In this document: positions 14,163-59,209 of the stretch, one piece after another
Layout of the letters: every line of letters starts with the position of its first letter
How positions within the stretch are numbered: the first letter of the stretch is position 1
DNA from: Selaginella moellendorffii
Lineage: Eukaryota > Plantae > Lycopodiophyta
NCBI RefSeq assembly: GCF_000143415.4
Contig: NW_003314313.1
Location: 957,430-1,021,429, forward strand
DNA: 64,000 nt
Reading direction: 5' to 3'
The notes under the pieces: model-generated
Databases searched by the model: none
What the model was told of the DNA's origin: nothing
The model's input: only the letters and a program-made list of their open reading frames with translations
Translations under genes and position numbers: made by a program

Positions 14163-14189
14163 TCCGCTAGGAGCAGGTTTTGCAGGTTG

Positions 14190-30070: not shown

Positions 30071-33000
30071 GTTTGTGAAGTATAAAAGGTTGAAATATGG
30101 ATTCAAGGTTTTGCGATGGGTTTGAGAATTTTACATAACTTATTAATGACTTACCATTTCGAAATTTACATTCTCAATATAGCCTTGAAGACGATCTTTT
30201 TTATTTTGTGAGGATGGATTCGGATGATCATTTATGGTTAGTGGTGTCTTCAATTTTTATTCCACACTTTTTCCATGTCTACTATAATTCTTCTATTTTA
30301 GGCAGGTATATGGGACATTATCATGTGACTGAGAAATTACACAAGTATTTTTATTGGCTGGAAATGTGCCGTGATATTATTCAATATGTATATAGTTATA
30401 TTTAGTGCCAAACTCGTAATATTCTCCCTCATGTTATGGAAAGACAATTAGAGTCAATTGTAGAGTCTCATTTGTTTGAGTTAGTGGTGTTTCATATGAT
30501 AAGACCTTTTCTACGGTCAATTGTTGGTAATAAGTATATTATTATTGCGTTTGATTACTTGACTTGCTAGGTAGAAGTCGGTGCTTTTACTAATGTGTCT
30601 ATAATTACTGTTAGATACTTCCTTTTCAATTAAATGGTGTTTTAACATTTATGTTTAAAGTAAATTCTCTCAAATAATGGTCTTACATTTATGGGTGAAA
30701 CATTTCACATTTTAACATTTCGGCTAGGGATATGCCACACTTTCATAAGTGCTTATCATCCACAGACGTCTAAATGGTTTAGTGGAAATGGCTCATTCAA
30801 ACCTTCAAAATGATGATCGTGAAGTACATAAACTGTCAACATTCGGATTGGGATAGTCATTTGCCATTTCTTTAATATGCATATGTCACAAGGGTATAAA
30901 GTTTTGTTAGTGCTTCACTATTGAAATTTTTTTTAGTCATGATCTAATACTACTATGGAAGTTGAGTTTACCTTTATTATTGTCATGAGTTGCCCGATGT
31001 AAGTCTTGAGGATCAATATTTGATGAGAATTCTTCCATTTTTCTGAGCAAAGTCTACTGAACATTTAGTGGTATATACAATTAGGATAACAATGGCATTA
31101 CAACTCCCATCATTATTCACCTCGTAAAGTACAAAGTGAACAATTTAGTATTAGTTTGTTTTCTCAATCTTATGGTACATAGTCTATCTTATAGTACATA
31201 GTTTTCCTAAGGCTTCTTGCTTAGTGGAAGGGACCATATCATATGTTGTAGCAAGTTGGACCACAAATTTATAAGGTTTGATGTCGCAAATGTGACTTCG
31301 GGTATCGAAAGTTACCTGTCAGTTGTGCTTTCGGATATTCTTTCCTTACTACCACGGCAAGAGGTCGGTATTGCTAAGACCCTTTATCAATCCTTCTTAT
31401 TCAAGTGTTAGTAAATTGAACTTTGTATCTATACTTGGTTGGACGAGCATAAGGATAGAATTCCTAAGTGTCTATTTAGCCAAGTATACTTGGCCCAGCT
31501 TGTTAGTTCTCTTTTGTTCTATTTTGCACTGTCTTGCACTGGCTTGACAAGAACCCTTGCATAGTGAAACAAGTCCCTCAATATCGCTGGATGATAGTTT
31601 GCCGTGTCTACTAAACACCCTTGTTATCATGCCCTTTGTGTTAGTCTCACTTTGGTCCTAAATGCTATTTATGGAAAGTGTCTAGATTTGCTCATTTGGC
31701 ATATCTACAAAATGTAGAGATTGTCCTGAATATAATGGTGTTCATCCCGTGTTTAAATTCACAATCTAAAGACATTCCATATTTAGTAAATTTCAAGCTT
31801 GTCCTAGAGACTAACTCTTGGTACTAAGGGAGGCTTGGGGTCCAAAGCGTGTATTTCTAAAGGGGGGGAGGGGCGGCCATGGGGGATTCCAAATATATAG
31901 TAGGGTTAGTGGGTAGGTCAGGTATGGTTGACCAACCTAAAGCATAATCTAGCTTTCATTTATGTGTCTATTCTTGTTCTGCATCCGACTTGGGTCTAAG
32001 CCCAAGTTCAATTCTATACTAGCTAGTGGAGTACCTATATCTTTACGTTAGGCCATCGGTATACTGAAATAGTGCTAGACTCTGTTTGGCTTCGTTTTGC
32101 ATGTTGGTTTTGGCATTAGAATGTTGGATACTCTAGGATTGTTCCAAATTGCTCTGCGCTCTTGTTCCTTCACTTCTTGGGTTGTACACTTGGGAGTCAT
32201 TCCGTGCTCCAATATCATTGCTCCTTGGCTCCATGCTTGGGAGTTTGGTACCGTTCCTTTGTTTAGTGACCCAAGGGCCTGAAACTCAGGTTCTGCACCA
32301 TTGTTCTTTAGACACGTGGCATGTGACACGTGGCATATGGAAGGTTTAGGTTCTGCTTCGTGGTTATCCTATGGTAAATCACCATAGGATAAAGGGTAAA
32401 AACCATGTGCGCTACATTTGGTATCAAAGAATAAGTCTCAACAAATACTATCTAATGAGATTGGGTAACTAGTCTCATTGCATATGCAGAAATGAAAAGG
32501 ATGATCCAAGTGGGTACACGTTTGGGTGCAAAAGCCTCGCATTTGTTCCTTGGGTATGGATTTTGGTTACCTTTTGTACCGTATTATATGAGTTTGCTCT
32601 TAAGATGGATGTGAGATGTTCCGTTTGCATGAGTTTATACTTGGGCTTGTAAGTGAGGCACATTAGCAACTCAAAGTTACACTTTACGTTAGTAGGATTA
32701 ATATTAGTCTATCGGTGGTTTCATGAGTGGTTCCTTATACCATGGGTGAAAGTAAACCTTCTCTAGGTTTGTTATAAGTGGCAAATAAGCTAGTTTGTAA
32801 TTGTTTAGCACTACACTAATAGATCCTTCTTAGACATGATTATGAGTGGATCAATCAAGACTATAGGGATTAGTCTATTGGTTCAAGTAGTCATTACCAT
32901 ACTCTCTCATAAACTTTTCTTGGATTGAACTGAAAGCAGTGTGAACGCAAGCTTGACGTTTGGTAAAAGATGAGACCAAAAAGAGAATTGTCAAGGACAA

Positions 33001-33885
33001 AGGATCAAACATATAAATCATTTTTTCTTCTTAGAGAAATGATTTGTAACGAGGTGTCAACTCATTGCCCGTGTTCACATTATGCAATCAAAAGTCCCTA
33101 CCTTGATGCATGTTGGAAGTGATGGTCTTGTAAGTAGTGAGTTGTGGGATGGATAGCGATGAAGCGTTGAACTATTTTGTCTAAGCTTGCTATTAGAAGA
33201 CTTGGGTTATAATGCTTAATTCTTTTTCGGGGAACCTTGTTGATGCTTGTAAGCGATTAATTTTTCCATTCTACTTTAGTCACTTAACCACATCTTTGAC
33301 CACTTGGAGGAGTCTCATTCACAACCTCCTTAAGTCCAATTCAGGACTTGGGACTTGCTAGCCCCGAGGATGGCATCCATGCCACTCATCCCTTGCACTT
33401 AGTCCAAGTGCTCCACGTGTCCGGTCCCAAGACCGGCACCCAAAGGTACCACTAACATATCAGCCCATTACACTAAGGCCATGCCCTTTGCCGGCTCTAG
33501 TTCCCCCGGGAGATCAATTGGCCGATGCTCCCAGTCCAAGTGTGGGTGGCACTACCTACTTGGATACCAGGTGTGGCTCAATGGAACCTCGCTCTAAGCC
33601 CATGGCTAGAGCACTTAAAGGCGGAAGGTGGGGAGAGTACCCAAGGGGCTTGCGTAGTGTGAGACACAAAATCCCTAGGCCCCAAAGTGGAGCCGGAAGG
33701 GCGCCACATGGTAGTGGCCGAAGCGAGAGCCAAACGAGCGTAACACGTTTGGACCAAAAGCTCCGACTTGAAAAGTCAAGAGCGGGAGTGGAACTCCCAA
33801 CGAAGTGCTCAAGGAACGAGCACGAAGCGAGCAAAAGGCGAGGCTCCAAAAAGGGACCCAAAAGGACCAACACATGACACGTGGG

Positions 33886-34562
33886 AGTGTCCGAGATGGA
33901 CTCGAGTTGGAGTCCGAAGTGGAGTCCGAGATGGACCCGAGTTGGAGTCCGAAATGGAGTCCGAGATGGACCCGAGATGGAGTCCGAGATGGAGTCCGAA
34001 GTGGAGTCCGAGGTGGACCCGAGATGGACCCGAGTTGGAGTCCGAAGTGGAGTCCGAGATGGACCTGAGATGGAGTCCGAGATGGAGTCCGAAGTGGAGT
34101 CCGAGGTGGACCCGAGATGGACCCGAGTTGGAGTCCGAAGTGGAGTCCGAGATGGACCCGAGATGGAGTCCGAGATGGAGTCCGAGATGGAGTCCGAGGT
34201 GGACCCGAGATGGACCCGAGTTGGAGTCCAAAGTGGAGTCCGAGATGGACCCGAGATGGAGTCCGAGATGGAGTCCGAGATGGAGTCCGAGGTGGACCCG
34301 AGATGGACCCGAAATGGAGTCCGAGATGGAGTCCGAGATGGACCCGAGATGGACCCGAGATGGAGTCCGAGATGGAGTCCGAGATGGAGTCCGAGATGGA
34401 GTCCGAAGTCGAGACCGAGACCGGGACCGAGACCGAGACCGAGACCGAGATCGGGAACGAGACCGAGACCGAGGCCGAGGCCGAGCCCGAGCCCGAGCCC
34501 GAGTCCGAGTCCGAATCCGAGTCCGAGTCCGAGTCCGAGTCCGAGTCCGAGTCCGAGTCCGG
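33886..34562 (+). repeat. LTR-internal minisatellite (GGAGTCCGAGAT/GGACCCGAGAT; 93-bp higher-order unit) followed by hexamer runs
   Basis: Directly visible. Near-identical copy at 39862-40538; shorter decayed inverted copies at ~41998-42350 and ~47630-48097. Confidence 0.97.
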
Positions 34563-37500
34563 AGCCTGAGAGGGTGACATCTCAAAGCGTTCGTCTCCCA
34601 GACCCTGGGGGGTTTGGTGAGCTCCAAAAGTATAGTAAGGGGGAGGACTGCAGTGGAGCCAGTTTGGCCAGGAAAGGCCAGTTTGGCCCAGGAAGGCCGG
34701 ACCCAGTGTTGGGTGATGAGCTGCCCACTGGGAAGTCCAAGACTAGAGTGAACACGGACCGACAAGCGGGGTAGCTTGGTGAAGTGTTCAAGAGCCGGCT
34801 CTAGTTCCCCCGGGAGATCGACTGGCCGATGCTCCCAGTCCAAGTGTGGGTGGCACTACCTACTTGGATACCAAGCGTGGCTCAATGGAACCTCGCTCTA
34901 AGCCCATGGCTAGAGCACCTAAAGGCGATAGGTGGGGAGAGTACCCAGGTGGCTCGCGTAAGGCCACGGTGTTCCGAAATGTTGTCCCAAAGGCCCAGAC
35001 TGTGGAAAGGAAGAGGAGCAGTCCTCTGGGGTAGTGACCAAGGACACAGTCATGTGGTGAGGAAGTCCCAGAGGACCGTGGGACTTAGTGGTCGGGCCTG
35101 TGGGCCTCGATCCAGTGGCAGTGTTGGCAAACACGGCCAGGGGCAAAAAGGGACTTGGTAGGAACTGACAAAGGGACTTTGGGGAAGGCAATTCCCCAGG
35201 TCTGTGGGCATCCTAAGGATGCTAAGGAGTGGATCTAGGATGACCACTCGTGGACACATGGCCAAGTCTTGGAGAGACGAGGTGGTGATGCAAGTGGTGT
35301 TGAACCACTAGTGCAGCAAAGGTGAATGGGCATGGCCTTAGCGTAACGGGCCGAGATGTCAGTGGTACCTTTGGGTGTCGGTCTCGGGACCGGACACGTG
35401 GAGCACTTGGACCAGGTGCAAGTGTGGAGTGGCATGGATGCCATTCTTGGGGCTAGCAAGTCCCAAGTCCTGAATTGGACTGATGGAGGTTGTGAATGAG
35501 ACTCCTCGAAGTGGTCAGAGGTGTGGTTAAGTGACTAAAGTAAAATGGAAAATTTAGTCGCTTACAATTTGGTATCGGAGCTGTTCCTTAGTCCGACTTT
35601 TATTGGTGCTCAAGTATATCACCACTAGTGTTGGCATCGGAAGGTCCGAGGAGTGGGCCTATCCTTGAGGAGTAGCAAGTCGGGAAGACATGGCTCTCCA
35701 TTACAGTTCATGTGTGAACTTGTAGACGAGGTGGTGGATAGAAAAGGGCCAATAATGGAACGACTTTGGGATCTTGGGAACAGTATATGGTTTTCCTCAA
35801 AAGAGTTGAGGATGTGATCCAGATGAGCGTTTGACTTAGCAAACTGGCTAATGTAGTTGTGATAAACAACTACAGTTGGGATCACGGGAAAGATAAAGAC
35901 TCCAAAGCAATAAAGGAGTCACAAGATTTTCCTCGTATAGTTGAGGTTGGTGCTCATGAATGTGAGACCAGAAGTAATGACCGTGGGAGGTCAAATATGG
36001 AAGAGGACTCAAGTCCTTGAAAAGGTAGCCGGGGCTACCTCTAATAAATGCTGGAACAACCCAAGGAGTTGGGGGTGTATTAAGTGGATGAGTTGGTGTT
36101 CTCATCACATGGACAAGTAGTCCTAAGGGGCAAAGGTTGCCCCCAGAGAACAAAATCAAGTGTCGGAGTAACACTTGTGAAAATAGTTCTTTTGAGTAGG
36201 ACAGGAATGCAAGAAGTGTATTCCAGTGAGCTAGTGCCTCACAAGTAGGACCTTACGGGTCTGTGGATTAACCAAGTCCAAAATTGCTGGATGACTCAAG
36301 TAGAGTCAACGGATGGTCCTAAAAGGACTGATGGAAGCATTTGGACTGAGGTGTGTTGTACCCCACAAAGGATGGGGGGGGGGGATCATAGGATCCAAGG
36401 ATGAGAACAGAGGGTATCTCATCAATGGCAAAATATGCCATGCTAAAGTTATGGGAAAGGTGTTCCCAGAAGAAAACAACTCTGACATAAAGTTGTGTGT
36501 GACCTCTATGGTGTAGTGCTAACGGATGGTTGGCATGAGAAAGAGCGGTGTTGGTCTTGGCAAAGACATAGACACGAAGGGGAAATGTCATAGAGGTAGG
36601 CTCGTGGAGCCGATGGTGTGGAGACACCAAATGTGCCAAGGTGTGATACCTTGAGGCTATGTTGGTGGGTTCATGAGAACCCCTTGCCAAAGGAATCCCA
36701 ATGGAATCGGGAATAGCATAGCCTAAGCTGCAGAGCATGCAGTTGGAGTGTGGTGACCCAGATAATGATGGAGGTGTGAAAGCACCAAGCAATGAGTTGT
36801 AGGACTTGACAACTATGAGGCAACTAAGCAAGAGGTGCAAAATAACTGGTTAAACGGGTAGAAGGTAGCTACCCAAGACTTCTTAATAGCATAAGGAAGT
36901 TGGATATACCCTTACGGGGGACAAGTTGCTTGTGTTGCGATATAGTAAGTCAATGTCATAAAAGGAAATACTCATTGTCAAGAAAGCCATCATTGGGACA
37001 TCCGGACACTCTAGAACACCAGAAGGTGGTGTTTGATGTCGCGAGGGCAATGGATAAAGCCCAAGGGACTAAGTCCCTAGCGAACGATGGATAGAAGGTG
37101 CTATCCAAATGTCCAAGGTTGCGGAGACAGGAGAGGACTGTCTACCCGGATTGGACAAAGCCAAAAATGGAATTTTGGCAAGGCTAGTGATGGGCATGTA
37201 ACGGCCCATAAGCAACAATGTAATCCCAGTGTGTGGGATTATAAGGTGAGCATACCCAGATTGAGGAACCACTCCCTAGGCTATTGGGTAGGTCCATCCC
37301 TAAGAATACTTGCTAAAGCATGATAGAAAGTGCAAAGCTATCCTCCTGGTCTGGAGGAGAATGACCGAAGGAAAGGTGTGAAGCCAAAAGCAAGTAGTAT
37401 TGGGATGGAATTGAACCATAGAAATCAAAGGGCATATCCAACAGTGGTTATGAAAGTTGGGAGTGGAGAATCAAGAGGGTGCTCGAGGATGTTGTTGCTA

Positions 37501-38044
37501 GCAACTGTGATGCCATGGAGAGTCTAAAATATGGAATTGTCCATGTTAGACTATATGGCAACTATAAAGCTTGCGAAAGGGGAGGCCTTAGCAAGCTGAG
37601 GGACAGAGTTCCTTCAAGGTTCCCAAAGACGATTCTAGGTAGCGTAGTACCTAGAAAGGCCAAGTGTAAATGGTTCATGGAACGCGCGAAATCAGAGTGG
37701 CGCAGCAGAAGCGTGGTCTTGAAGCTTGCCATGAGGCAAGGCTATCAAGGTTAGGGAAGTAGTTCCCGAGTGTTCAAAGAGAGGGCTTTGAACGAAAGTC
37801 GATGGTCAAGGACTTTCACGCTTATGCAGGAACCATGTTACAATGGTCGGAGGACTTGCCAAGTGAGATTGGCACGTCGGGGGAACAAAGACCCTAGTTG
37901 AAGGTGATAACTTCAAAAAGGGTGGGCCATGGGGCCGAGCATGGAGGAGTCCATGCATGATCACAGACATGTCAAGTGAGAGGACTTGGCAGTGTGGAGG
38001 AACTAGGTTCCTAAGCTGTGATCTGTAGCGCGCTTTAAAAATAG

Positions 38045-38466
38045 GTTGGTGCACCGGCGTGGGGAGTCACGCCAGGCATCTAGTGTGATGCCGTCCGTAG
38101 ATGCATATACGGAGGTTGGGTTCGAGTCCCGACCCTCTAGTGCTTGGGTTCGAGTCCCAAATCACTAGGGCGTGGTGATGGTTTGGAATATGAGGACACT
38201 CATATTTCGGTGGTCATGGACTCTCAGTGGGGAGACTGGTTTGGGCACACCGCCAAGCGAGGGATGCCTCGGAGTCGTGATGCACGGTTAGATTGCTTAG
38301 TGTGAAAGCTCAGCATATCTAACTTGAACACTTTGGTGCAAGTGGCACCGAGGTCGTGGTGAGTGAGATGGGGACACCTAATCTCAGTTGCTATGAACCC
38401 TTGGCCGTAAGGGCTAGCTTGGGTGCACCGCCAAGTGTGGGGGATGCCCCCGGGGTTATAGTCAAC
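38045..38466 (+). ncRNA. Candidate structured cis-RNA domain in the E-family interior
   Basis: More than ten consecutive stem-loops, two tRNA T-arm-like hairpins and two covarying copies of a four-stem motif. Conserved in E2 (rc ~43783-44206). Transcription is not shown. Confidence 0.5.
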
Positions 38467-39861
38467 AACTTGGAGGTCTAGAAGACCAAGTACCTCTTGG
38501 CAACTCTGTTAAGGTGCCAAGGTGAGATCACTAGGTGATCTTATGGCCAGAAAAGGACAAGGTCCTTGGTTGGCTAAGGAATGAAGTTCCTGGTTCAAAA
38601 TGTTGAAATTGAACTGTTTAAGGTGGTGTGGCTTGGTCGTGATAACCAAGTGGGAAGAGCACCTAAGGGAAATAAACTATGTCCGTGCGATGGCATAGTG
38701 AGTCCGAAGAAAGTAGTCTCTATAAAAGACCCATGGGAGGGTCACGAAGTTGGGCCATGGATAGAGCCCATAGCAGAAGATGCTAAAGAGACGTACTAGG
38801 GGTGAACATCCTCCGGACTTGGCAAAGAAGAGTCTTTGCTATGGAACCGAAAGGAAACCTCAAAAATGGAGGTAGCGATCCTATGTTGCTTGGTGCAACA
38901 ATCCAAGGATAGGAGCAAAAGATGAGTGCCCAAGATAGGGCCGTGGAATCCATTGGAAAGAATCCAAGTGGCAAAGTTAGCCAAGGAACACTAAGGCGGT
39001 TGATGCTAACGGATTGCGGAAAAAGAAGTGGAATTCCAAGGATGGATTCCCAAGTGCTCCAATTTGGTGAAGGAAAGGCTCCAAGTGAGGGAGCAACTAA
39101 GTAGCCAAAAGATAGGGCCGTGGACAGCCCTAGCACAAATAATGATAAATGGAACGTAATGCCAATGGTGGCACAAAAATAGAAAAGAGGATGAGGGTGC
39201 CCTCGAGTAGAGAACTTCCTAGGAGGGGAAGTGGAGTTGCACAAAATGTGCAAGGCAAGGTGTCAGAGACACCTAGAAAATTGACTTCGAGAAGTCAAAA
39301 GTAAACGTTCCAAAGTGCAAAGGTAGATCAATGGAATCTGTGACTACTCAAGAATGAGTAGTGGAATTGAGTTAGAGAGGGTGCCTCTAACGGGTTTAGC
39401 GAGAACTAAACCAATAAACGGAAAGAACCACCCCAAGTGGTCCAACCAGTTTCTAAGTTGGAGAGACTATCTTCCTTAGAGGATGGACAAGGCATGGTGA
39501 GCCTTCGGGGTAAAACCATAGACAAATATTGGCCGGGTGCCAAGGATGGGAATGGTAATACCTGCGAGTGTTACTTTATAAAAGGGTTTACCGTTCGATG
39601 AGGACATCGAACTTCGTCTATGGGTGGTGGAGTTGTGAGACACAAAATCCCTAGGCCCCAAAGTGGAGCCGGAAGGGCGCCACATGGTAGTGGCCGAAGC
39701 GAGAGCCAAACGAGCGTAACACGTTTGGACCAAAAGCTCCGACTTGAAAAGTCAAGAGCGGGAGTGGAACTCCCAACGAAGTGCTCAAGGAACGAGCACG
39801 AAGCGAGCAAAAGGCGAGGCTCCAAAAAGGGACCCAAAAGGACCAACACATGACACGTGGG

Positions 39862-40538
39862 AGTGTCCGAGATGGACTCGAGTTGGAGTCCGAAGTGGAG
39901 TCCGAGATGGACCCGAGTTGGAGTCCGAAATGGAGTCCGAGATGGACCCGAGATGGAGTCCGAGATGGAGTCCGAAGTGGAGTCCGAGGTGGACCCGAGA
40001 TGGACCCGAGTTGGAGTCCGAAGTGGAGTCCGAGATGGACCTGAGATGGAGTCCGAGATGGAGTCCGAAGTGGAGTCCGAGGTGGACCCGAGATGGACCC
40101 GAGTTGGAGTCCGAAGTGGAGTCCGAGATGGACCCGAGATGGAGTCCGAGATGGAGTCCGAGATGGAGTCCGAGGTGGACCCGAGATGGACCCGAGTTGG
40201 AGTCCAAAGTGGAGTCCGAGATGGACCCGAGATGGAGTCCGAGATGGAGTCCGAGATGGAGTCCGAGGTGGACCCGAGATGGACCCGAAATGGAGTCCGA
40301 GATGGAGTCCGAGATGGACCCGAGATGGACCCGAGATGGAGTCCGAGATGGAGTCCGAGATGGAGTCCGAGATGGAGTCCGAAGTCGAGACCGAGACCGG
40401 GACCGAGACCGAGACCGAGACCGAGATCGGGAATGAGACCGAGACCGAGGCCGAGGCCGAGCCCGAGCCCGAGCCCGAGTCCGAGTCCGAATCCGAGTCC
40501 GAGTCCGAGTCCGAGTCCGAGTCCGAGTCCGAGTCCGG
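39862..40538 (+). repeat. Second copy of the LTR minisatellite (E1 3' LTR)
   Basis: Same array as 33886-34562. Confidence 0.97.
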
Positions 40539-43500
40539 AGCCTGAGAGGGTGAAAGCCCAAAGCGTTCGTCTCCCAGACCCTGGGGGGTTTGGTGAGCTC
40601 CAAAAGTATAGTAAGGGGGAGGACTGCAGTGGAGCCAGTTTGGCCAGGAAAGGCCAGTTTGGCCCAGGAAGGCCGGACCCAGTGTTGGGTGATGAGCTGC
40701 CCACTGGGAAGTCCAAGACTAGAGTGAACACGGACCGACAAGCGGGGTAGCTTGGTGAAGTGTTCAAGAGCCGGCTCTAGTTCCCCCGGGAGATCGACTG
40801 GCCGATGCTCCCAGTCCAAGTGTGGGTGGCACTACCTACTTGGATACCAAGCGTGGCTCAATGGAACCTCGCTCTAAGCCCATGGCTAGAGCACCTAAAG
40901 GCGATAGGTGGGGAGAGTACCCAGGTGGCTCGCGTAAGGCCACGGTGTTCCGAAATGTTGTCCCAAAGGCCCAGACTGTGGAAAGGAAGAGGAGCAGTCC
41001 TCTGGGGTAGTGACCAAGGACACAGTCATGTGGTGAGGAAGTCCCAGAGGACCGTGGGACTTAGTGGTCGGGCCTGTGGGCCTCGATCCAGTGGCAGTGT
41101 TGGCAAACACGGCCAGGGGCAAAAAGGGACTTGGTAGGAACTGACAAAGGGACTTTGGGGAAGGCAATTCCCCAGGTCTGTGGGCATCCTAAGGATGCTA
41201 AGGAGTGGATCTAGGATGACCACTCGTGGACACATGGCCAAGTCTTGGAGAGACGAGGTGGTGATGCAAGTGGTGTTGAACCACTAGTGCAGCAAAGGTG
41301 AATGGGCATGGCCTTAGCGTAACGGGCCGAGATGTCAGTGGTACCTTTGGGTGTCGGTCTCGGGACCGGACACGTGGAGCACTTGGACCAGGTGCAAGTG
41401 TGGAGTGGCATGGATGCCATTCTTGGGGCTAGCAAGTCCCAAGTCCTGAATTGGACTGATGGAGGTTGTGAATGAGACTCCTCGAAGTGGTCAGAGGTGT
41501 GGTTAAGTGACTAAAGTAAAATGGAAAATTTAGTCGCTTACACGTAGGCCCACGGTATTCCGAAATGTTGTGCCAATGGTGGAAAGGAGGAGGAGCAATC
41601 CTCTAGTGTAGTGACTAAGGATACAGTCACATGGTGAGGAAGTCTTAGAGGACTATGGGACTTAGTGGTCGGGCCTGTGGGCCTTGATCTAGTGGCAGTG
41701 TCGGCGAACATGGCCATGGACAGAAAAGGGGTTTGGTATGAACTGATAAAGGGATATTGGGGAAGGCTATTCCCCATGTTTGTAGGCATCCTAAGGATGC
41801 TAAGGAGTAGATTTGGGTTGACCACTCGTGGACGGATGGCCCAGTCTTGGAGAGATGGGATTGTGATGCAAGTGGTATTGGGTCTGGCCTTTCCTAGCCA
41901 AACTAGCTCCACTGCAGTCCTCCCCCTTACTATACTTTTGGAGCTCACCAAACCCCCCAGGGTCTGGGAGACGAACGCTTTGGGCTTTCACCCTCTCAGA
42001 CTCGAACTCGGACTCGGAGTCGGAGTCGGACTCGAACTCGGACTCGAACTCAGACTCGGACTCGGGCTCGGGCTCGGTCTCGGTCTCGGTCCCGGTCTCG
42101 GTCCCGGTCTCGGTCGCGGTCTCGGTCCCGGTCTCGGTCTCGACCTCAGACTCCATCTTGGGTCCATCTCGGGTCCATCTCGGACTCCATCTCGGACTCC
42201 ATCTCAGACTCCATCTCGGGTCCATCTCGGACTCCATCTCAAGTCCATCTTGGACTCCATCTCAGACTCCATCTCGGGTCCATCTCGGACTCCATCTCAA
42301 GTCCATCTCGGACTCCATCTCAGACTCCATCTCAGGTCCATCTCGGACTCTGCCATGTGTCATGTGTTGGTCCTCTTGTGTCCCTTTTCTAGAGACTCAC
42401 TTATTGCTTGCTTCGTGCTTGTTCCTTGAGCACTTCGTTGGGAGTTCCACTCCCACTCTCGACCTTTCAAGTCGGAGCTTTTAGTCCAAATGTGTTACGT
42501 TCGTTTGGTTTTCGCTTCAGCCACTACCACATGGCACCCTTCACTTTGGGGCCTAGGGATTTTGTGTCTCACAACTCCACCACCCATAGACAAAGTTCGA
42601 TGTCCTCATCGAATGGCAAGCCCTTTTATAAAGTAACACCCGCATGTATTACCATTTCCATCCTTGGCACCCAGCCAATATTTGTCTATGGTTTGACACC
42701 AAAGGCTCACCATGCCTTGTCCATTCTCTAAGGAGTATAGTCTCTCTAACATAGAGACTCACTCGACCACCTGGGGTGGTTTGCTCCCTTTTATTGGTTC
42801 AGTTCCCACTAAACCTATTAGAGACACCCTCTCTAACTCAATTCCACTACTCATTTTCGAGTAGTCTCAGATTCCATTGACATAACCTTTGCACTTGGAA
42901 CTTTTAATTTTGACTTCTCAGAGTCAATTTCCTAGGTGTCTCCAACACCTTATGTTGCACATGGTGCAACTCCACTTCCCTATCCTATGAAGTTTTTTAC
43001 TTGAGGGTACCATCATCCTCTCTTCGATATTATGCCACCTTTTGCACTAAGTTCTAGTTATCATAATTGGTGCTAGGGTTGCCCACGGCCCTATTATTTG
43101 GCTACCTTACCACTCCCCCCTTTGGAGCATCCACTTTCGCCAAATCGGAACAGTTGGGAATCCATCCTTGGGGAAACATTGCCTTTTCCACAATCCGTTA
43201 GCACCCAACACGTTAGTGTTTTCAACTTAACTTTGCCATTTGGTTTCTTTCCCATGATTCTCATGGCTCTTTTCTTAGCCATTAGTCTTTTGCTCCTATC
43301 TTTGATTGTTTTCTTAGCCACTAGTCTTTTGCTCCTATCCTTGATTGTTGCACCCAGCAACATAGGATCGCTACCTCTATTTTTGAGGTTTCCTTTCGGT
43401 TCCATAGCAAACACTTTGCTTTGCCAAGTCTAGAGGGTGTTCACCCCTAGTACGTCTTTTTAACATTTTCTGTTGTGGGCTCTATTCATGGCCCAACTTT

Positions 43501-46500
43501 TTGAGACCCTCCCTTGATCTTTTATAGAGACTACTTTCCTTGGATTTACTATGCTATAGCATTGACATAGCTCATTTCTTTTAGGTGTTCTTCCCACTTG
43601 GTCACCTTGACCAAGCCACACCTTTATCAATAGTTCAAATCAACACTTTGAACTGAGAATCACATTTCTTAACCTAAACAAAGACCTTGTCCTTGTTTAG
43701 CCACAAGATCACCTAGTGATCTCATCTTGACCCCTTAATAGGTCTATCAATAGGAACTAAGTCTTCCAGACCCTTCTAAGTTGTTGACTATGACCCCGGG
43801 GGCATCCCCCACACTTGGCGGTGCACCCAAGCCAGCCCTTCCAGCCAAGGATCCATAGCAATTGAGATTTAGGTGTCCCCATCTCATTCACCACATCCTT
43901 AGTGCCCTTTGCACCAAAGTGTTCAAGTTAGATATACCGAGCTTTCACTCTAAGCAATCTAACCGTGCATCACGACTCCGGGGCATCCCCTGTTTGGCGG
44001 TGTGCCCAAGCCAATCTCCTCATTGAGAGTCCATGACCACCGAAATATGAGTGTCCTCATATTCCAAACCATCACTACACCCTAGTGATTTGGGACTCGA
44101 ACCCAAGCACTAGAGGGTTGGGACTCGAACCCAACCTCCGTATATGCATCTACAGACGGCATCACCCTAGATGCCTGACGTGACTCCCCACACCGGTGCA
44201 CCAACTTATACTTGAAGTGCGCTATAGATCACAACTTAGGAACCTAGTTCCCCCGCACTGCCAAGTCCTCTCACTTAACAAGTCTGTGATCATACATGGA
44301 CTCTTCCATGCTCGGCCCCATGGGCCACCCCTTTTGAAGTTAGCACCTTCAACTAGGGGATTTGTCCCCCTGACTTGCCAATCTCACTTAGCAAGTCATC
44401 TGGCCACCGTAACATGGTTCATGCATAAGCGTGAAAGTCCTTAACCATTGACTTTTGTTCAAAGCCCTCTCTTTGAACACTCGGGAACTACTTCCCCAAC
44501 CTTGATAGCCTCGCCTCATGGCCAGCTTCAAGACCACGCTTCTACTGTGCCACTCTGATTTTGCGCACTCTAGGAACCATTTACACTTGGCCTTTCTAGG
44601 TACTAAACTACCTAGAATCGTCTTTAGGAACTTGAAGGGATTCTATCCCTTAGCTTGCTAAGGCCTCTCCTTTTGCAAGCTTTCCAATTGCTATATAGTC
44701 TAGCATGGACAATTCCATGCTTTAGACTCTTCATGGCACCATAGTTGCTAGTAACAATACACTCGAGCGCCCACTTGATTCTCCACTCCCAACTGACATA
44801 ACTACCCTTGGTTATGCTCTTTGATTCCTATGGTTTGGTTCTATCCCTTTACTACTTACTTTTGGCCTCACACATTTCCTTCAGTTATTCGCCTTCAAAC
44901 TAGAAGGGTAGCTTTGCACTTTCTACCATACCTTAGCAAGTATTCTTAGGGATGAACTTACCCGACAGCTTAGGGAGTGGTTCCTCAATCTAGGTATGCT
45001 CACTTTATAATCCCACACACCAGGATTAACGTTGCTACATATGAGCCTTTATATGCCCATCACTAGCCCTGCCAAAATTCCATTTTTGCTTTTATCTGAT
45101 TCGGATAGACAGACTCTTTCCATCTTTGCAACCTTGGACATTTGGATAGCACCTTCTATCCATCACTCAATAGGGACTTAATCCCTTGGGCATTATCTAT
45201 TGCCTTTGCGACATCAAACACCACCTCCAGGTGTTCTAAAGTGTTTGGGTGTCTCAATGATGGCCTCTTTGACAATGAGCATTCCCCTTTTCAACATTGA
45301 CGTATTATATCGCAATATAAGCAATTTATCTCCTATAAGGGTATATCTAACTTCTTTATGCCATTAAGAAATCTTGGGTAGCTACCTTCTACCAGTTTAA
45401 CAAATTATTTTGCACCTTTTGCTTAGTTGCCTCATAGTTGTCAAGTCTTACAACTCATTGCTTGGTGCTTCCACATCTCCATCATTATCTGGGTCACCAC
45501 ACTCCAACCACATGCCTTCCAGCTTAGGCCATGCCATTACCATTTCCATTGGGATTCCTTTGGAAGGGGTTCTCATGAACCTGCCAACTTGACCTCAAGG
45601 CAGCATGCCTTGGCACATTCGGTGTTTTCACACTATCAGCTCCACGAGCCTACCTCTATGATACTTCTTACTTGTGTCTAGGTCTTTGCCAAAGACCAAT
45701 ATGGTTGTCTCTTATGCCAACTATCAGTTAGCACTACACTATAGTGTTCACACACAACTTTATGCCAAAGTTGCTTTCTTTTGGGGAACACTTTTCCCAC
45801 GATTTTAGTATGGCACATTTTGCCATCGATGAGATACCCTTTGTTCTCATACTTGGATCCTATGATCCCCCCCATCCTTTGTAGGGTACAACACACCTCA
45901 GTCTAAATGCTTCCATCAATCCTTTAGGATTATTCTTTGACTCTATTTGAATCATCCAGCTTTTTGGATTTTATCATCCGACGACCCGTGAGGTCCTACC
46001 TTTGAGGTGCTAGCTCACTGGAAACAACTTCTTGTATTCAGGTCCTACTCACAAGGACCATCTTTGCAAGTGTTACTTCGACATTTGATTTGTTCTCTTA
46101 GGGCAACCTTTTGCCCCTTAGGACCACTTGTCCATGTAATGAGAATACCAACTCATCCTCTGAGTACACCCCCAACTCCTTGGGTTGTTCCAGCATTTAT
46201 TAGAGGTAGCCCTGGCTACCATTTCAAGGACTTGTGTCCTCTTCTGTATTTGACCTCCCATGGTCATCAATTCCGATCTCAAAGTTATGAGCACCAGCCT
46301 CAACTATATGAGGGTAATCTTGTGACTCCTTTATTGTTTTGGAGTTTGCATCTTTCCCGTGATCTCAACTATAGTTGTTTACCACAACTACATTAGCCCA
46401 TTTTCTGCATCAAACGCTCATCTGAATCACATCCTCAACTCTCTGAGGAAACACTTATACTGTTCCCAAGATCCCAAAGTCATTCCGTTACTAGCCCTTT

Positions 46501-49500
46501 TCCATCCACCACATCGTGCACAAGTTCACGCATGAACTTGAGTGGAGAGTTATGTCCTCTCGACATGCTACTCCTCGAGGATAAGTCCATATCTAGGACC
46601 TTCCAATTTCAATACAAGTGGTGATATACTTAGCCACCAATAAGATTCGGACTAAGGAACAGCTCTGATACCAAGTTGTAAGCAACTAATTTTTCTATTC
46701 TACTTTAGTCATTTAACCACACCTCCAACCACTTAGAGGAGTCTCACTCACAACCTCCGTAAGTCTTATTTTGGACTTAGGGACTTGCTAGCCCCAAGAA
46801 TGGCATCCATGCCACTCAACAATTGCACTTGGTCTAATTGCTCCATGTGTCCGATCCCATGACCAACACCCAAGGTACCACCAACATACCAGTCCGTTAT
46901 GCTAGGCCATGCCCATTCACTTTGGTCACATCGGTGGTCCAACACCACCTACATTGCAATCCTGTCTCTCCAAGACTGGGCCTTCTGTCCATGGGTGGTC
47001 ATCCTAGATCCACTCCTTAGCATCCTTAGGATGCCCACAGACATGTTCTCCAACATCCCTTTGTCAGTTCCTGCCAAGTCCCTTCTTCCGTCCATGGCCA
47101 TGTTCGCCAACATTGCCACTAGATCAAGGCTCGTAGGCCTAGCCACTAAGTTCCATTGTCCTCTAGGACTTCCTCACCATGTGACCGTATCCGTAGTCAC
47201 TACACTAGAGGACTGCTCCTCCTCCTTTCCCCCATTTGGGACTTCGGGACAACATTTCGGAACACCTGTGGATACTCTCCCCACCTTCTGCCTTTAGGTG
47301 CTCTAGCCATGGGCTTAGAGCGAGGTTCCATTGAGCCACACTAGGTATCCAAGTAGGTAGTGCCACCCACACTTGGACTGGGAGCATCGGCCAGTCGATC
47401 TCCCGGGGGAACTAGAGCCGGCTCTTGAACACTTCACCAAGCTACCCCGCTTGTCGATCTGTGTTCACTCTAGTCTTGGACTTCCCAATAGGCAACTCAT
47501 CACCCAACACTGGGTATAGCCTTTCTAGGCCAAACTGGCTCCATTGCTGTCCTCCGCCCTACTATACTTTTGGAGCTCACCAAACCCCCTAGGGTTTGGG
47601 AGACGAATGCTTTGGGCTTTCACCCTCTTGGACTCAGACTTGGACTTGGACTCGGCCTCGGCCTCGGTCTTGGTCCCAGTTCCAGTCTCAGTCTTAGTCT
47701 CGGTCTCGGTCCCGATCTCAGTCCCAGTCTCGGTCTCCATCTCAGGTCCTTCTCAGACTCCATCTTAGATTCCATCTCGGGTCCATCTTGGACTCCATCT
47801 CAGACTCTATCTCGGTCCATCTTGGACTCCATCTCGGACTCCATCTTGGGTCCATCTCGGACTCCATCTCGGGTCCATCTCAGGCTCCATCTCAAACTCC
47901 ATCTTGGGTCCATTTCGGACTCCATCTTGGGTCCATCTTAGACTCCATCTCGGACTCCATCTTGGGTCCATCTCGGGTCCATCTCGAACTCCATCTCGGA
48001 CTCCATCACAAACTCCATCTCGGGTCTATCTCGGACTCCATCTCAGACTCCATCTCAAGTCCATCTCGGACTCCATCTCGGGTCCATCTTGGACTCTGCC
48101 ACATGTCATGTGTTGGTCCTCTTGTGTCCCTTTTCTAGAGACTCACTTATTGCTTGCTTCATGCTTGTTCCTTGAGCACTTCGTTGGGAGTTCCACTCCT
48201 GCTCTTGACTTTTCAAGTCGAAACTTTTAATCCAAACATGTTAAGCTCGTTTGGTTTTCGCTTCAGCCACTACCACATGGCACCCTTCCGGCTCCACTTT
48301 GGGGCCTAGGGATTTTATTGATATTGGTGGTTTCTGTACTCTAATACTAGTTTATCAAATGATAACTTGCTTAGGATACTTTTATGTTCTAATATATTTA
48401 GTCACTGATAATTAAGTCTCTATGGTATCATTGTCTATGACTTTGATATTATCCATCTATTGATCTTTGAGTTTGGGCCAATATAGGCAGACTAGCTTCG
48501 GCACTTCGTGAAATCTTTAGTCATGGGGTAGCTATTGTTAACTAGTCACATCACTTGCCTCTTTGTTGATGTTCCTTATTCGATTATAAAGGGTGTGACT
48601 GTGTAAACAACTCTAACTGCTTATTTACAATAGTCTATCTAAACCTTACTGACAGGTTTGGTTTCTTTGCTCATAAGGGTTAGGGCCTCTGACTTTTCTC
48701 TCTATGTCCCTACAAGCAAGGGCGTATCACACTTTTGTAAGTTGGGTGACACCCAGAGCAGCAAGGGTGGCTGACTGTATTGGTCATTTCTTTGTCAGTG
48801 ACAGCCAAAAGGTAGCGCATCCGTGTTAGACAAAGAGGTTACCCTAACTCATTTAAGTTGGTGCATTTATCACATAGTGTGATCACTGTGAACTTTTTCT
48901 AAAGTTGTTTCCTTGCCAATGGTCTAGACTGGAGTATGCATCGACGAGGATGTCAATTTTCTCTAAAGGGGGGAGAGTGTTATGAATATGACTTTGGGTA
49001 TCGAAAGTTACTTGTTAGTTGTCCTTTCAGATATTCTTTCCTTACTACCACAATGGAAGGAGGTCGGTATTGCTGGGACCCTTTATCAATCCCTCTTGTT
49101 AAAGTGTTAGTAAGTTGGACTTTGCATCTATACTTGGCTGGATGAGCATAAGGACAAATTCCTAAATGTCTATTTAGCCAAGTATATTTGGCCCGACTTG
49201 TTAGTTCTCTTTTGCTTTGTCTTGCACTGGCTTGACAAAAAACTTTGCGTATTGAAACTAGTCCCTCAATATCACTGGATGATAGTTTACCGTGTCTGCT
49301 AAACACCCTCACTATCATGCCCTTTGTGTTAGTCTCATTTTAGTCCCAAATGCTATTTATGGAAAGTGTCTAGATTTGTTTATCTATGAAATGTAGAGAT
49401 TGTCCTAAACACAATGGTGTTCATCCCGTGTCCAAATCCGCAATCTAAGGACATTCCATATTTAATAAGTTTGGAGTTTGTCCCAGAGACTAACTCTTGG

Positions 49501-50432
49501 TACTAAGGGAGGCTTGGGGTCCAAAGCGTGTGTTCCTAACTAGGGGGGGGAGGGGCGGCCATGGGGGGTTCCAAATGTATAGTAGGGTTAGTGGGTAGGT
49601 CAGGCATAGTTGACCAATCTAAAGCATAATTTAGCTCCCGTTTACATGCATATCTTTGTTCTGCATCTGCTTGGGTCTAAGCTCAAGTTCCATTCCATAC
49701 TAGCTGGTGGAGTACTCATATCTTTACATTAGGGCACCAATATACTAAAATAGTGCCAAACTCCATTTGGCTTTGTTTTGCGTGCTGGTCTTGGCATTGG
49801 GATGTTAGATACTCTAGGATTGTTTCAAATTGCTCTGCACTCCTGTTCTTTCACTCCCTAGGCTGTACACTTGGGAGTCATTTTGTGCTCCAGTGCCATT
49901 GCTTCTTGGCTCCATGCTTGGGAGTTTTGTACTGTTCCTTTGTTCAATGGCACAAGGCCCTATAACTTAGGTTCTACACCACTGTCCTTTGGACACATAG
50001 TATGTGACACATGGCACATAAAGGGTTTAGGTTCTACTTCGTGATTATCTTATGGTAAATCATTATAGGATAAAAGGTAAAAACCACATGCACTACATTT
50101 GACATGATATTCAATGGACTGATCCTTTAGAAATTATGCATATGTAGTACTTGAAACAGTTCGTACAAAAGGATCATGAATAACTAGTACCACCTACAGA
50201 TCCACCAATATGCTATAATTTATAGCACAGCAATTAAATATACTTGAAGTTCTTGAGATGTCTCTTGGTAGTGGTGGAAGCATATTGGTGGATTGGTACT
50301 AGTTAAAGCTAGTAAATAGCTTTAGCTTTATTAAGCTAATAAAAATAAGAATTATTCTATTAATATGAATTATTATTTATTAGCTTTAGTAATAAGCTGG
50401 TTAAGCTAGTAAGCTTTAGCTTTATTATTTAT

Positions 50433-52700: not shown

Positions 52701-53336
52701 GCTAAGCCTTTCTGCTGCCACCTAAACAAGACAAGCTTGAAGCAGCCAGGGACGCATGGATCATGAGCCACTACATACTAGATGCAAGCTAAGTATTTAT
52801 TCTGGATGGGAGCATGGACTTGGGTGTAGTGCCCTGCAGGAGCTGTAGAAGCATAAGATCGGCCCATGGTGAGGGAGCACAGCACTCGAGGTTGTAGCTT
52901 GGCGGGATGCAGCCACAGCTAGAACTTGATGCTCGTAGCCGATGACTTTTGCAGGATCGCCAACCTGTTCATTTGGAGCCAACGCTCCTACGGAGACAAA
53001 AACAAATAATTAGCTTTTATTTAAAAAGGGAATCTTCTTCAAATATCCAGATTGATTCTATATTTGCTTTTTGAGAGCCATTAAATTAGATAACCGTTAA
53101 ATCTAATACGTCCATTCATAATCTAACGGTTGGCGATGAGAGTAGAGGACTCAAGGTTTGTGTCGCAATGAAGAGAATGCTTTCGGGTCCAAGGTTTACG
53201 TAGCGTCCTCGCTGGTGAATCTGGTCGTGGTGAGAAGCTCTGGGTTACTCAGGGCCCCCGACACCTTGCTTGCAAGGGTATGAGCAATAGCAATACGTCA
53301 ACACCCACAACTTGTTGAAAGTCAAAAAAAGTCAAA

Positions 53337-57965: not shown

Positions 57966-59003
57966 ATGGCTCGTCAGGAAATGTCTCTCGTATCCTTCCT
58001 CCGCAGCAATGGAATCACTCACGTCCTCCGGAACGACGAATCACAGGTAAAAGCCTCCTATACTTTAGAACGGGGACAAACGTATGATACTGTATCTTCT
58101 TCTTTGTGACCTTCACTTGGAAAGGTGGAGACTAAGGTGCTCGAAGGAAAGATCGTTGGCTTGCTCTTCTCGGTGGAATCAAACAAGTCATGCAGCAACT
58201 TCGTCAACAAGCTGCTGGGTATCTACGATGAAATCCAAAAGATTTCCACCGCTGGCGCTGGTGGTGTTGGATTCGAAGTGGTGTTTGTTTCGGGTGACAC
58301 GGATGAGGCGAGCTTCAAGCAATCCATGAAGAAAATGCCTTGGCTGGCACTACCGTTCGACGTCAAAGGAGCTACGACTGCGAAGCTAGCTCGACGTTTC
58401 AAAGTGGAAGTGATGCCAAGCTTGGTCCTTGTTGGTTCCAATGGAACAACATTGCTATCGAGGTATGGTTACAGCTTGGTCACCAGGTTTGGGTCGAAGG
58501 CTTTTCCTTTCACGCAAGAACACATCCGAGACCTGGAAAAAGTGGAGGATCAAAACGCCAGCAAGCTTCCCGTGGAACTCAAAGATGGAGCGCACGAGCA
58601 TGTCTTGCTGCTGGTGAAAGACCCCTATGACAACGCAATGTTTACTTGTGACAAATGCCAGGAGGATGGGTGTGGATGGTGCTACCATTGCAAGGAATGC
58701 TCCTACGATCTACACTTGGACTGCATCAAACCAGTCCCCAAAACACCTGTGAAGGAGATCAAGGATGCGAAGGATCAGATCAAGGATAAAAAGGATCAGA
58801 TCAAGGATGCAATGGATCAGATCAAGGATTCTCCATCCACGCAAATTGAAGGCAAAGCTGGTGCCATGATGGACACTTTCAAGCAAAGAAAAGGATCTAC
58901 GAGCGTTGCCCTCATTAGTGTCGTTCTGATTCTTCTCACATTGTTATGGGTTCTTGGTTTTCTTGGACGAAAGTTCTTCCTCGAGAAGAAGAATGCTGCA
59001 TAA
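57966..59003 (+). CDS. Nucleoredoxin-like protein: single Trx-like domain + C1 (DC1) zinc finger + C-terminal TM helix
   Basis: Exon 1 (MARQE)MSLVSFLRSNGITHVLRNDESQ, intron ~58047-58124, then VETKVLEGKIVGLLFS..FEVVFVSGD..MPWLALPF..AFPFT, HEHVL..CDKC..YHCKECSYDLHLDC, IKDxxDQ repeats and a hydrophobic tail. In-frame ATGs at 57945, 57966 and 57981. Confidence 0.85.
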
Positions 59004-59209
59004 AATTCACTATAAAATTCATAACAGATAATTAATTTTAGCACTTCCAATTTCAGTTTAAGATGATTTGCAAATGTTTATCATAAGTGGTAAAAAATGA
59101 GATTTTGCTCGCTTTATATTCACATAAAAGCATGGAAAATGCTATGCTATGCTTGTGATATACTCCATGGTGGTATACAAGATCCCATAATAGTTTTCAT
59201 ACTTCAAAC

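What the first reader, a model, noticed from the sequence alone, without database searches (positions are those of the whole stretch)
38045..38466. Dense, conserved structured-RNA core inside a protein-free mobile element
Seen: back-to-back hairpins GGCGTG/CACGCC (38056-73), GGCATC/GATGCC (38075-92), TCCGTA/TACGGA (38094-113), two T-arm-like hairpins and GGAATATGAG-gaca-CTCATATTTC. These are followed by two diverged copies of one four-stem motif (38213-38281 and 38387-38466): closing stem; TCTC/GAGA vs CCCTT/AAGGG; GTTTGG-gcacaccg-CCAAGC vs GCTTGG-gtgcaccg-CCAAGT; GAGG-gatg-CCTC vs GGGG-gatg-CCCC. Stems differ in sequence between copies but keep pairing, while the loops CACCG and GATG are fixed. 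In E2 this block looks better conserved than its flanks, and most (not all) changes keep pairing or fall in loops. One loop contains the palindrome GTGCAC, the same hexamer as an HIV-1 dimer-initiation loop. Known: LARDs carry structured non-coding interiors. Inference: this is a packaging/dimerisation scaffold or an undescribed structured ncRNA that lets the element use a helper's particles.
Basis: partly seen in the sequence, partly recalled or inferred. Interest (0 to 1): 0.8.

Follow-up and report, generated by a model that had tools for sequence, protein, structure and literature searches.

The report
Covarying RNA domain in hairpin-tiled retrotransposon
A young, very abundant, protein-less jumping gene of a land plant has a 4-kb body made of about 100 short RNA hairpins, and the flagged 422 bases are its most stable part, holding a duplicated four-way-junction RNA domain whose stems changed sequence but kept pairing, which suggests the RNA fold is under selection.

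Summary
The 422 nt fold far better than shuffles (z -7.4).

The two "four-stem motifs" are diverged tandem copies of a ~100-nt domain (38185-38285 and 38363-38466). Each is a GACA-loop hairpin followed by a 14-bp closing helix around three hairpins. Across the four copies in E1 and E2, 98.5% of pair cells stay paired. Ten of 33 pairs changed on both sides, against 0-3 in slid controls. The fold is specific to the + strand.

The block is not a unique structured island. The whole 4067-nt interior of this non-coding LTR element is tiled by about 96 perfect short hairpins, 4-6 times the density of the LTRs and the rest of the window. The element has 1.9-kb LTRs 99.8% identical, a CGTAG target duplication, an iMet-type primer site, and no ORF, Pfam or Rfam match. 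The flagged block lies in the most stable, best conserved stretch (about 37.5-38.5 kb).

The family is very abundant in genomic DNA and almost silent in two RNA-seq runs. A packaging or dimerisation role is plausible but untested.

This scan has already noted the same family on other DNA of this genome. It is a LARD-type element with an undescribed RNA domain.

The parts
33653..33657 (+). Target-site duplication CGTAG, left copy (right copy at 41543-41547)
33658..35566 (+). E1 5' LTR, 1909 bp, TG...CA ends, 99.8% identical to the 3' LTR. It carries 12/23/35-nt tandem repeats. Its hairpin density is at background level.
35570..35581 (+). Primer-binding site TGGTATCGGAGC, one mismatch from the initiator-Met type
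   Evidence: the PBS type is from my own knowledge
35567..39633 (+). Non-coding interior, 4067 nt, tiled by about 96 perfect hairpins (5-8 bp stems, 3-12 nt loops) with purine-rich, C-poor loops and linkers
37691..37717 (+). 27-nt stretch that looks like the 5' acceptor strand plus D arm of the primer tRNA (initiator Met)
   Evidence: The identity is recalled from memory. It is supported only by the logic of the PBS complement and by a wheat small RNA with the same first 17 bases.
37939..38030 (+). Possible third, strongly diverged copy of the domain architecture: a GGAG-loop hairpin, then a closing helix around two hairpins
   Evidence: (E = 0.25, for the E2 counterpart only)
38048..38055 (+). 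Self-complementary octamer GGTGCACC at the 5' edge of the block
38056..38113 (+). Three back-to-back 6-bp hairpins. The first two look like tandem duplicates that differ by two compensated pairs. The third has the loop GATGCATA, which contains the palindrome ATGCAT.
38114..38170 (+). Two T-arm-like hairpins with the loop TTCGAGT. The second sits on top of an 8-bp helix, giving a minihelix-like shape.
   Evidence: No tRNA call or tRNA model hit.
38185..38285 (+). Domain copy A: GACA-loop hairpin, then a 14-bp closing helix around three hairpins (four-way junction)
38286..38362 (+). Spacer with two hairpins between the domain copies
38363..38466 (+). Domain copy B. Its third hairpin has the loop GTGCACCG, which contains the palindrome GTGCAC at 38423-38428.
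39622..39632 (+). Polypurine tract GGGTGGTGGAG, immediately before the 3' LTR
39634..41542 (+). E1 3' LTR
43783..44205 (-). Counterpart of the block in E2, the older inverted copy (interior 42574-46676)

Best explanation
Shown: the block lies in the most stable and best conserved stretch of the genomic RNA of a very abundant, non-autonomous, protein-less LTR retrotransposon of LARD type in a land plant.

Shown: its whole 4-kb interior is a chain of short hairpins. Inside the block is a tandemly duplicated ~100-nt domain: a GACA-loop hairpin followed by a four-way junction.

Shown for this domain only: the helices kept their pairing while their sequences diverged. That points to selection on the fold of the + strand transcript in the replicating lineage.

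Inferred: the fold acts in cis when the RNA is copied by a helper element's proteins. It would offer many exposed purine-rich (G-rich) loops and specific junction domains for the helper's Gag/nucleocapsid to select the RNA. Two loop palindromes (ATGCAT, GTGCAC) could start kissing-loop dimerisation. Individual inserted copies then decay neutrally.
For: Element anatomy:
- LTRs 99.8% identical, TSD CGTAG, PBS and PPT present.
- No coding capacity.

Structure against chance:
- z is -7.4 for the block.
- z is -3.5 to -10.6 for every 422-nt window of the interior.
- For 150-nt windows, mean z is about 0 in genes and other DNA and about -1 in a gypsy interior.
- 170 perfect 5-bp hairpins against 28.7 +/- 6.3 in shuffles.
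- 12-16 hairpins per kb against 2-5 per kb elsewhere, LTRs included.

Covariation between domain copies A and B, and between E1 and E2:
- 33 pairs, 98.5% of cells paired.
- 10 pairs changed on both sides, against 0-3 in slid controls.
- 0 of 500 shuffles reach the observed covariation score.
- Three further compensated pairs between E1 and E2 inside the block.
- 13 of 17 single changes in the block keep pairing, against 105 of 243 in the whole interior.

Strand:
- Consensus energy is -31.1 kcal/mol on the + strand and -16.7 on the - strand. G-U pairs are conserved in all four copies.
- Loops and linkers hold only 6-8% C but 74-77% purines.

Age:
- The young copy E1 is more structured (mean z -2.6/-3.2) than the old copy E2 (-1.7/-2.0, LTRs about 88% identical).

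Success as a parasite:
- 92,695 DNA contigs of one run lie on the interior.
Against: - Only two full copies could be read. The covariation therefore rests on one ancient duplication plus one E1/E2 split, about two independent contrasts.
- Over the whole interior, E1 against E2 shows no excess of double changes over slid controls (24 against 17-32). More than half of single changes break pairs.
- Stem divergence of about 9% against 16.5% elsewhere is what ascertainment on perfect stems plus neutral decay would give.
- z-scores are equally negative on both strands, because the stems are mostly perfect Watson-Crick.
- No result touches packaging, dimerisation or a helper.
- The domain lies 2.6 kb from the PBS, not in a 5' leader.
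- Two RNA-seq runs give only 8 and 11 reads.
- The number of loop palindromes is within chance for the interior as a whole.
Confidence: 0.5

Rival explanations
1. The fold is selected for a generic property rather than for a specific signal. A compact chain of short hairpins could shield a non-coding genomic RNA from small-RNA-guided cleavage and from nucleases, or keep it compact enough to be packaged. The duplicated domain would then be just the most stable part.
For: Hairpins tile the whole interior rather than one site, with very diverse stems and loops and no dominant loop motif. Stems of 5-8 bp are too short for Dicer-type processing (general knowledge). Purine-only linkers prevent long-range misfolding.
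Against: The conserved loop sequences (GACA, CACCG, GATG) and the conserved G-U pairs and bulge in both domain copies suggest specific recognition rather than generic stability. The block is better conserved than its flanks.
Confidence: 0.25
2. The hairpins are a mutational by-product. Reverse-transcriptase or replication template switching, together with local duplication, would create and repair short inverted repeats in a sequence free of coding constraint, with no function for the fold.
For: Template switching is documented to create and maintain perfect hairpins, including apparent compensatory changes (PMC8794818). Here the stems are overwhelmingly perfect Watson-Crick, while stems with one G-U or A-C are at chance level. 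z-scores are alike on both strands. The whole-interior E1/E2 pattern is near neutral. Tandem duplication of modules is evident.
Against: The equally non-coding LTRs of the same element have background hairpin density. The closing helix keeps three G-U pairs and a bulge in all four copies, which arm-to-arm copying would erase. Loops and linkers are strongly strand-asymmetric. In perfect stems, wobble-forming transitions outnumber A-C-forming ones 63 to 24. The young copy is more structured than the old one.
Confidence: 0.15
3. The block is a captured small-RNA gene (tRNA, SINE or tRNA-like structure) that works as a Pol III unit or a tRNA mimic, as in Cassandra or Helenus elements.
For: There are two hairpins with the T-loop sequence TTCGAGT. 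A 27-nt stretch 330 nt upstream of the block looks like the 5' part of the primer tRNA. There is a weak Tymovirus TLS hit (12.4 bits, E = 5.9). Helenus exists in Selaginella moellendorffii (PMC10886601).
Against: ARAGORN finds no tRNA. No tRNA model hit at E <= 10, and the TLS hit is far below its gathering score of 40 bits. The pieces lie in the interior of a 7.9-kb element, not in short LTRs.
Confidence: 0.05

Closest known systems
LARDs (large retrotransposon derivatives, e.g. Sukkula of barley; Kalendar et al. 2004, as cited in PMC7215508)
   Same: An LTR element several kb long with a PBS and PPT, no protein-coding capacity, high copy number, and an internal domain reported to specify conserved RNA secondary structure.
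   Different: The LTRs are 1.9 kb rather than about 4.5 kb, and the element is in a non-seed plant. No sequence comparison with Triticeae LARDs was run here. Here the interior is resolved as a chain of about 100 perfect hairpins plus a defined covarying four-way-junction domain. I could not read the 2004 paper, so I cannot say whether barley LARDs are built the same way.
Retroviral packaging and dimerisation signals (HIV-1 Psi SL1-SL3, the DIS kissing loop, gammaretroviral GACG double hairpin)
   Same: Clustered stem-loops with exposed purine-rich loops (GGAG occurs 4 times among 35 tetraloops). Six-base palindromes sit in 8-nt loops with a flanking purine or purines.
   Different: The position is 2.6 kb from the PBS rather than in the leader. 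There is no sequence or model similarity. Function is untested. This resemblance is recalled from my own knowledge and is a lead, not a test.
Dispersed packaging-signal hairpins of ssRNA viruses (MS2, STNV type)
   Same: Many short hairpins spread along the whole genomic RNA.
   Different: Those hairpins share a coat-protein-binding loop motif. No dominant loop motif is seen here: GTG is 2.2-fold enriched in loops, which is not robust after multiple testing.
Cassandra / Helenus TRIMs and retrozymes (non-autonomous LTR elements that carry a small structured RNA)
   Same: A non-autonomous LTR element whose non-coding RNA carries a recognisable structured module.
   Different: Those are elements under 1.5 kb whose module (5S, tRNA or hammerhead) sits in the LTR (PMC10886601, PMC7215508). 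Here no 5S, tRNA or hammerhead model matches, and the module is in a 4-kb interior.

Membership tests
LTR retrotransposon | Two direct LTRs with TG..CA ends, flanked by a target-site duplication | tested here: met
   1909-bp LTRs, 99.8% identical; TG/CA ends; 5-bp TSD CGTAG
LTR retrotransposon | Primer-binding site after the 5' LTR and polypurine tract before the 3' LTR | tested here: met
   TGGTATCGGAGC at 35570-81; GGGTGGTGGAG at 39622-32
LARD | No gag/pol coding capacity in an internal domain of several kb | tested here: met
   The longest ORF is 173 aa. Ten ORFs gave no Pfam hit at E <= 1. tblastn with gypsy gag/pol gave no E-value below 0.8. Two ORFs had no relatives in the protein word search.
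LARD | Conserved internal domain with conserved RNA secondary structure | tested here: met
   For the duplicated domain. For the rest of the interior, conservation between only two copies is inconclusive.
LARD | High copy number and mobilisation in trans by an autonomous partner | tested here: inconclusive
   Abundance is met: 92,695 contigs laid. No partner was identified. The gypsy elements in the window lack the domain. Earlier scan notes claim an autonomous carrier, but I could not read that DNA.
TRIM / Cassandra / Helenus | Element under about 1.5 kb with short LTRs that carry a 5S or tRNA unit | tested here: not met
   The element is 7.9 kb with 1.9-kb LTRs. No 5S or tRNA match.
Retrozyme | Hammerhead ribozyme in the LTRs | tested here: not met
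   No Rfam family at gathering score in the window.
tRNA or viral tRNA-like structure | Cloverleaf or TLS fold recognised by covariance models | tested here: not met
   ARAGORN found 0 genes. No tRNA hit at E <= 10. Tymo_tRNA-like scored 12.4 bits against a gathering score of 40.
Kissing-loop dimer initiation site (HIV-1 DIS type) | Self-complementary hexamer exposed in a hairpin loop and conserved among copies | tested here: inconclusive
   ATGCAT and GTGCAC lie in 8-nt loops and are identical in E2. However, 2 observed against 0.96 expected over all loops gives P = 0.24.
Kissing-loop dimer initiation site (HIV-1 DIS type) | RNA dimerises through the loop | not testable with these tools
   Needs native-gel or SHAPE dimer assays.

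The most novel reading that the evidence does not exclude
The GACA hairpin plus four-way junction would be a portable recognition domain that both the autonomous helper and its protein-less parasites carry. It would be the actual handle by which non-autonomous LTR retrotransposons are selected into helper particles. The hairpin-tiled body with G-rich loops would then be an evolved high-avidity binding surface for nucleocapsid. This would give the first defined, testable cis-signal for the hijacking of a helper by a plant LARD.
Probability: 0.3. Interest if true: 0.75.

Novelty: new variant of a known kind. Interest (0 to 1): 0.55.

Why it matters
How protein-less LTR retrotransposons (LARDs and TRIMs) get themselves packaged and copied by a helper's machinery is still largely a matter of assumption. 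A conserved RNA structure in LARDs has been asserted since 2004, but to my knowledge without a defined motif.

This element offers a concrete, small (~100 nt), covarying domain with conserved loops, present twice in the element. It sits in an RNA that is almost entirely short hairpins. That makes the question testable by probing, Gag/NC binding, dimerisation assays, and genome-wide covariance searches for the helper.

If the hairpins instead turn out to be a by-product of template switching, the element would be a striking natural example of that mutational process.

Tried and rejected
- Rfam at gathering score and at relaxed E-values gave nothing meaningful.
- ARAGORN found no tRNA.
- Protein routes to more copies all failed. 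ORFs from the interior and the LTRs have no relatives and no exact records. The gypsy Pol of the window finds only relatives at 57% identity or less from other organisms, so no same-genome loci could be fetched.
- The first metagenome scan, with a 23-mer of the GACA hairpin, gave 0 hits.
- The second metagenome scan, with a degenerate 20-mer of hairpin 3, gave 26 loci. The covariance model matches only the 20-mer itself in them, so these are chance hits. The viral contig scan gave 0 hits.
- A G-U versus A-C test on stems with one internal mismatch was underpowered: 7 against 1 for stems with 3 flanking pairs, and no difference for stems with 2.
- A whole-interior test for compensatory change between E1 and E2 gave no excess of double changes. 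I therefore do not claim covariation for the interior as a whole.
- I looked for the loop CACCG pairing with a CGGTG next to copy A as a possible pseudoknot. Copy B has no counterpart, so I dropped the idea.
- The motif GCACCG is not enriched in the window: 18 matches against 12.7 expected.
- Kalendar et al. 2004 could not be read.
- The plant initiator tRNA sequence could not be confirmed from a held source. Only a wheat small RNA whose first 17 bases match the stretch was found.

Full report
**Setting.** The window is land-plant DNA: PPR genes, nucleoredoxin-like genes and gypsy elements are present. The block 38045-38466 lies inside element E1, which has these features:
- Two 1909-bp LTRs (33658-35566 and 39634-41542), 99.8% identical, with TG...CA ends.
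- A 5-bp target duplication, CGTAG.
- A primer-binding site, TGGTATCGGAGC, three bases after the 5' LTR.
- A polypurine tract before the 3' LTR.

The 4067-nt interior has no ORF above 173 aa. Its ten longest ORFs gave no Pfam hit at E <= 1. tblastn with the gag-pol of the window's gypsy elements found no trace. There is no Rfam family and no tRNA.

A second copy, E2, lies inverted next to E1, with its interior at 46676..42574. It is about 85% identical to E1. Its LTRs are only about 88% alike over the part that aligns cleanly. So E1 is a very recent insertion and E2 an old one.

**The observation.** The block folds at -196.3 kcal/mol against -153.4 +/- 5.8 for dinucleotide shuffles. That is z -7.4 on the + strand and -5.6 on the - strand.

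Identity to E2 is 90-92% for 37567-38366, against 82-89% upstream and 72-85% downstream. Family-level depth in a DNA run is also high here and drops after 38486.

**The block is not an island.** Perfect hairpins (stem of at least 6 bp, loop 3-12 nt) occur as follows:

| Region | Hairpins per kb |
|---|---|
| E1 interior | 12-16 |
| E2 interior | 9-14 |
| Rest of the window, including the LTRs of the same elements | 2-5 |

The E1 interior holds 96 non-overlapping perfect hairpins with 5-8 bp stems. It has 170 perfect 5-bp hairpins against 28.7 +/- 6.3 in shuffles, and 33 perfect 7-bp hairpins against 1.6.

Every 422-nt window of the interior has z between -3.5 and -10.6. The strongest stretch is about 37527-38650, which is also the most G+C-rich. 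For 150-nt windows the mean z values are:

| Region | Mean z (+ strand / - strand of the window) |
|---|---|
| E1 interior | -2.6 / -3.2 |
| E2 interior | -2.0 / -1.7 (the window's - strand is E2's sense strand) |
| Gypsy interior | about -1 |
| Genes and other DNA | about 0 |

Loops and linkers are purine-rich and hold only 6-8% C, so nearly all C is paired. That composition is typical of natural structured RNAs read on the + strand (general knowledge).

**The duplicated domain.** A relaxed self-comparison showed that 38190-38276 resembles the E2 counterpart of 38380-38466. Aligning 38185-38285 (copy A), 38363-38466 (copy B) and their E2 counterparts gives about 65-70% identity between A and B (my estimate from the alignment).

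RNAalifold predicts one common fold:
- a hairpin with a GACA loop;
- a 14-bp closing helix with a conserved bulge and three conserved G-U pairs;
- three hairpins enclosed by that helix, two of which keep the loop motifs CACCG and GATG.

Of the 33 pairs, 10 changed on both sides while staying paired, five of them in the closing helix. In total, 98.5% of the 131 cells are standard pairs. Partners slid by 1-3 columns give 0-3 such pairs and 29-47% pairing. No shuffle out of 500 reaches the observed covariation score.

The reverse strand gives -16.7 kcal/mol against -31.1 for the + strand. At this divergence, unselected helices would have lost about half their pairs. This is the main evidence that the + strand RNA fold has been maintained in the replicating lineage.

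A covariance model of the domain finds only these four copies in the window. It also gives one weak hit (E = 0.25) just upstream in E2, matching E1 37939-38030, which has a similar hairpin-plus-junction layout.

**E1 against E2.** Inside the block there are 32 substitutions:
- 19 lie in pairs and keep pairing. These include three compensated pairs: 38227/38236, 38260/38269 and 38396/38457.
- 6 break pairs. These include one U-G to C-A double change.
- 7 are unpaired.

Thirteen of 17 single changes in pairs preserve pairing, against 105 of 243 over the whole interior. The compensated pairs and the A/B comparison go beyond that.

Over the whole interior the comparison is weak. Double changes number 24, against 17-32 in slid controls, although 16 of the 24 remain canonical, against about 8 in controls. 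More than half of single changes break pairs. Lower divergence in stems (8.9% against 16.5%) is expected from choosing stems that are perfect in one copy.

In perfect stems, wobble-forming transitions outnumber A-C-forming ones 63 to 24. This asymmetry fades when the full MFE structure is used.

I read this as neutral decay of the old copy E2 laid over a structure that is kept in the active lineage. The young copy being more structured fits that reading. With two copies it remains an inference.

**Abundance and expression.** One DNA run puts 92,695 contigs on the interior at 85% likeness or more, with many deletion joints. Two RNA-seq runs of the same species give only 8 and 11 reads from about 9 million records each.

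One run of uncertain type holds a 2.6-kb contig in which the LTR end is joined directly to 37870-39324. That is a deletion derivative which keeps the block but lacks the primer-binding site.

**Mechanism.** What is shown is a selected RNA fold in a non-coding, highly successful LTR element. What is inferred is its use. The most economical reading is a cis-acting signal for the helper's Gag/nucleocapsid and for RNA dimerisation. The points in its favour are:
- G-rich exposed loops; GGAG is the commonest tetraloop.
- Conserved junction domains present in two copies.
- Two loop palindromes, ATGCAT and GTGCAC, both inside the block and identical in E2.

Two palindromes against 0.96 expected over all loops is not significant, and no helper was found.

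The rivals are generic shielding or compaction of the RNA, a template-switching by-product (PMC8794818), and a captured small-RNA unit. The last is disfavoured by the negative tRNA and Rfam tests.

**Known relatives and earlier notes.** LARDs are described as protein-less LTR elements whose internal domain specifies conserved RNA secondary structure (PMC7215508, citing Kalendar 2004). This element meets those criteria.

The same scan has already flagged the same kind of hairpin-tiled element, probably this family, on other pieces of this genome:
- s1-337345, s1-402665 and s1-398746. One follow-up names the organism as Selaginella moellendorffii, which I did not verify.
- Two first-reader notes (s1-348973, s1-332889) describe a "GACA hairpin + four-way junction" domain. 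They say it is shared with autonomous elements and is single in one family. I could not read that DNA, so these are leads only.

**Searches outside the window.** Searches for the domain in metagenome and viral contigs found only chance matches.

**Verdict.** This is a real, covarying RNA domain in the most stable stretch of a hairpin-tiled LARD-type element. The kind is known. The domain itself is undescribed, and its function is still untested.

Noticed in passing
window 37691-37717: A 27-nt stretch in the sense orientation looks like the 5' acceptor strand plus D arm of the initiator tRNA-Met, the same tRNA the PBS is complementary to. It is conserved in E2 with 2 changes. The identification is from memory. 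A wheat small RNA shares its first 17 bases (PMC5411081).
   Followed up: partly
window 33830-34620 and 39810-40600: The LTRs carry a long array of 12/23/35-nt tandem repeats followed by a dinucleotide-like tract. These give long spurious ORFs on both strands and strongly negative fold z-scores on the + strand.
   Followed up: no
window 33247-33657 and 41543-41880: Inverted and direct fragments of the same LTR family flank E1. E2's 3' LTR appears truncated near 41880. E1 and E2 together sit inside an older element whose LTR-like repeats are 31289-32420 and 48985-50101 (85% identical).
   Followed up: partly
window 8979-16334 (- strand): A gypsy-type element with gag, PR-RT-RNase H and integrase ORFs, LTRs about 95% alike and an iMet-type PBS. 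It lacks the RNA domain and is not hairpin-rich. A second, degraded gypsy lies at about 17-22 kb.
   Followed up: partly
window 38038 (run X16): A contig of a possibly RNA-derived run carries a 26-nt A-rich insertion at the A-rich linker just before the block. It also joins the LTR end directly to 37870, so it is a deletion derivative without a PBS. The A-rich linker might be a relic poly(A) junction of a captured sequence.
   Followed up: no
window 53312-57843 and 58125-60032: Two long PPR ORFs on opposite strands overlap by about 55 bp at their ends. Next to them are two tandem thioredoxin-like plus C1-domain (nucleoredoxin-like) ORFs.
   Followed up: no
E1 interior hairpin loops: The trinucleotide GTG is 2.2-fold and ATG 1.65-fold over-represented in hairpin loops relative to loop composition. 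GGAG is the commonest tetraloop (4 of 35). This could be a nucleocapsid-type motif, but it is not robust after multiple testing.
   Followed up: partly
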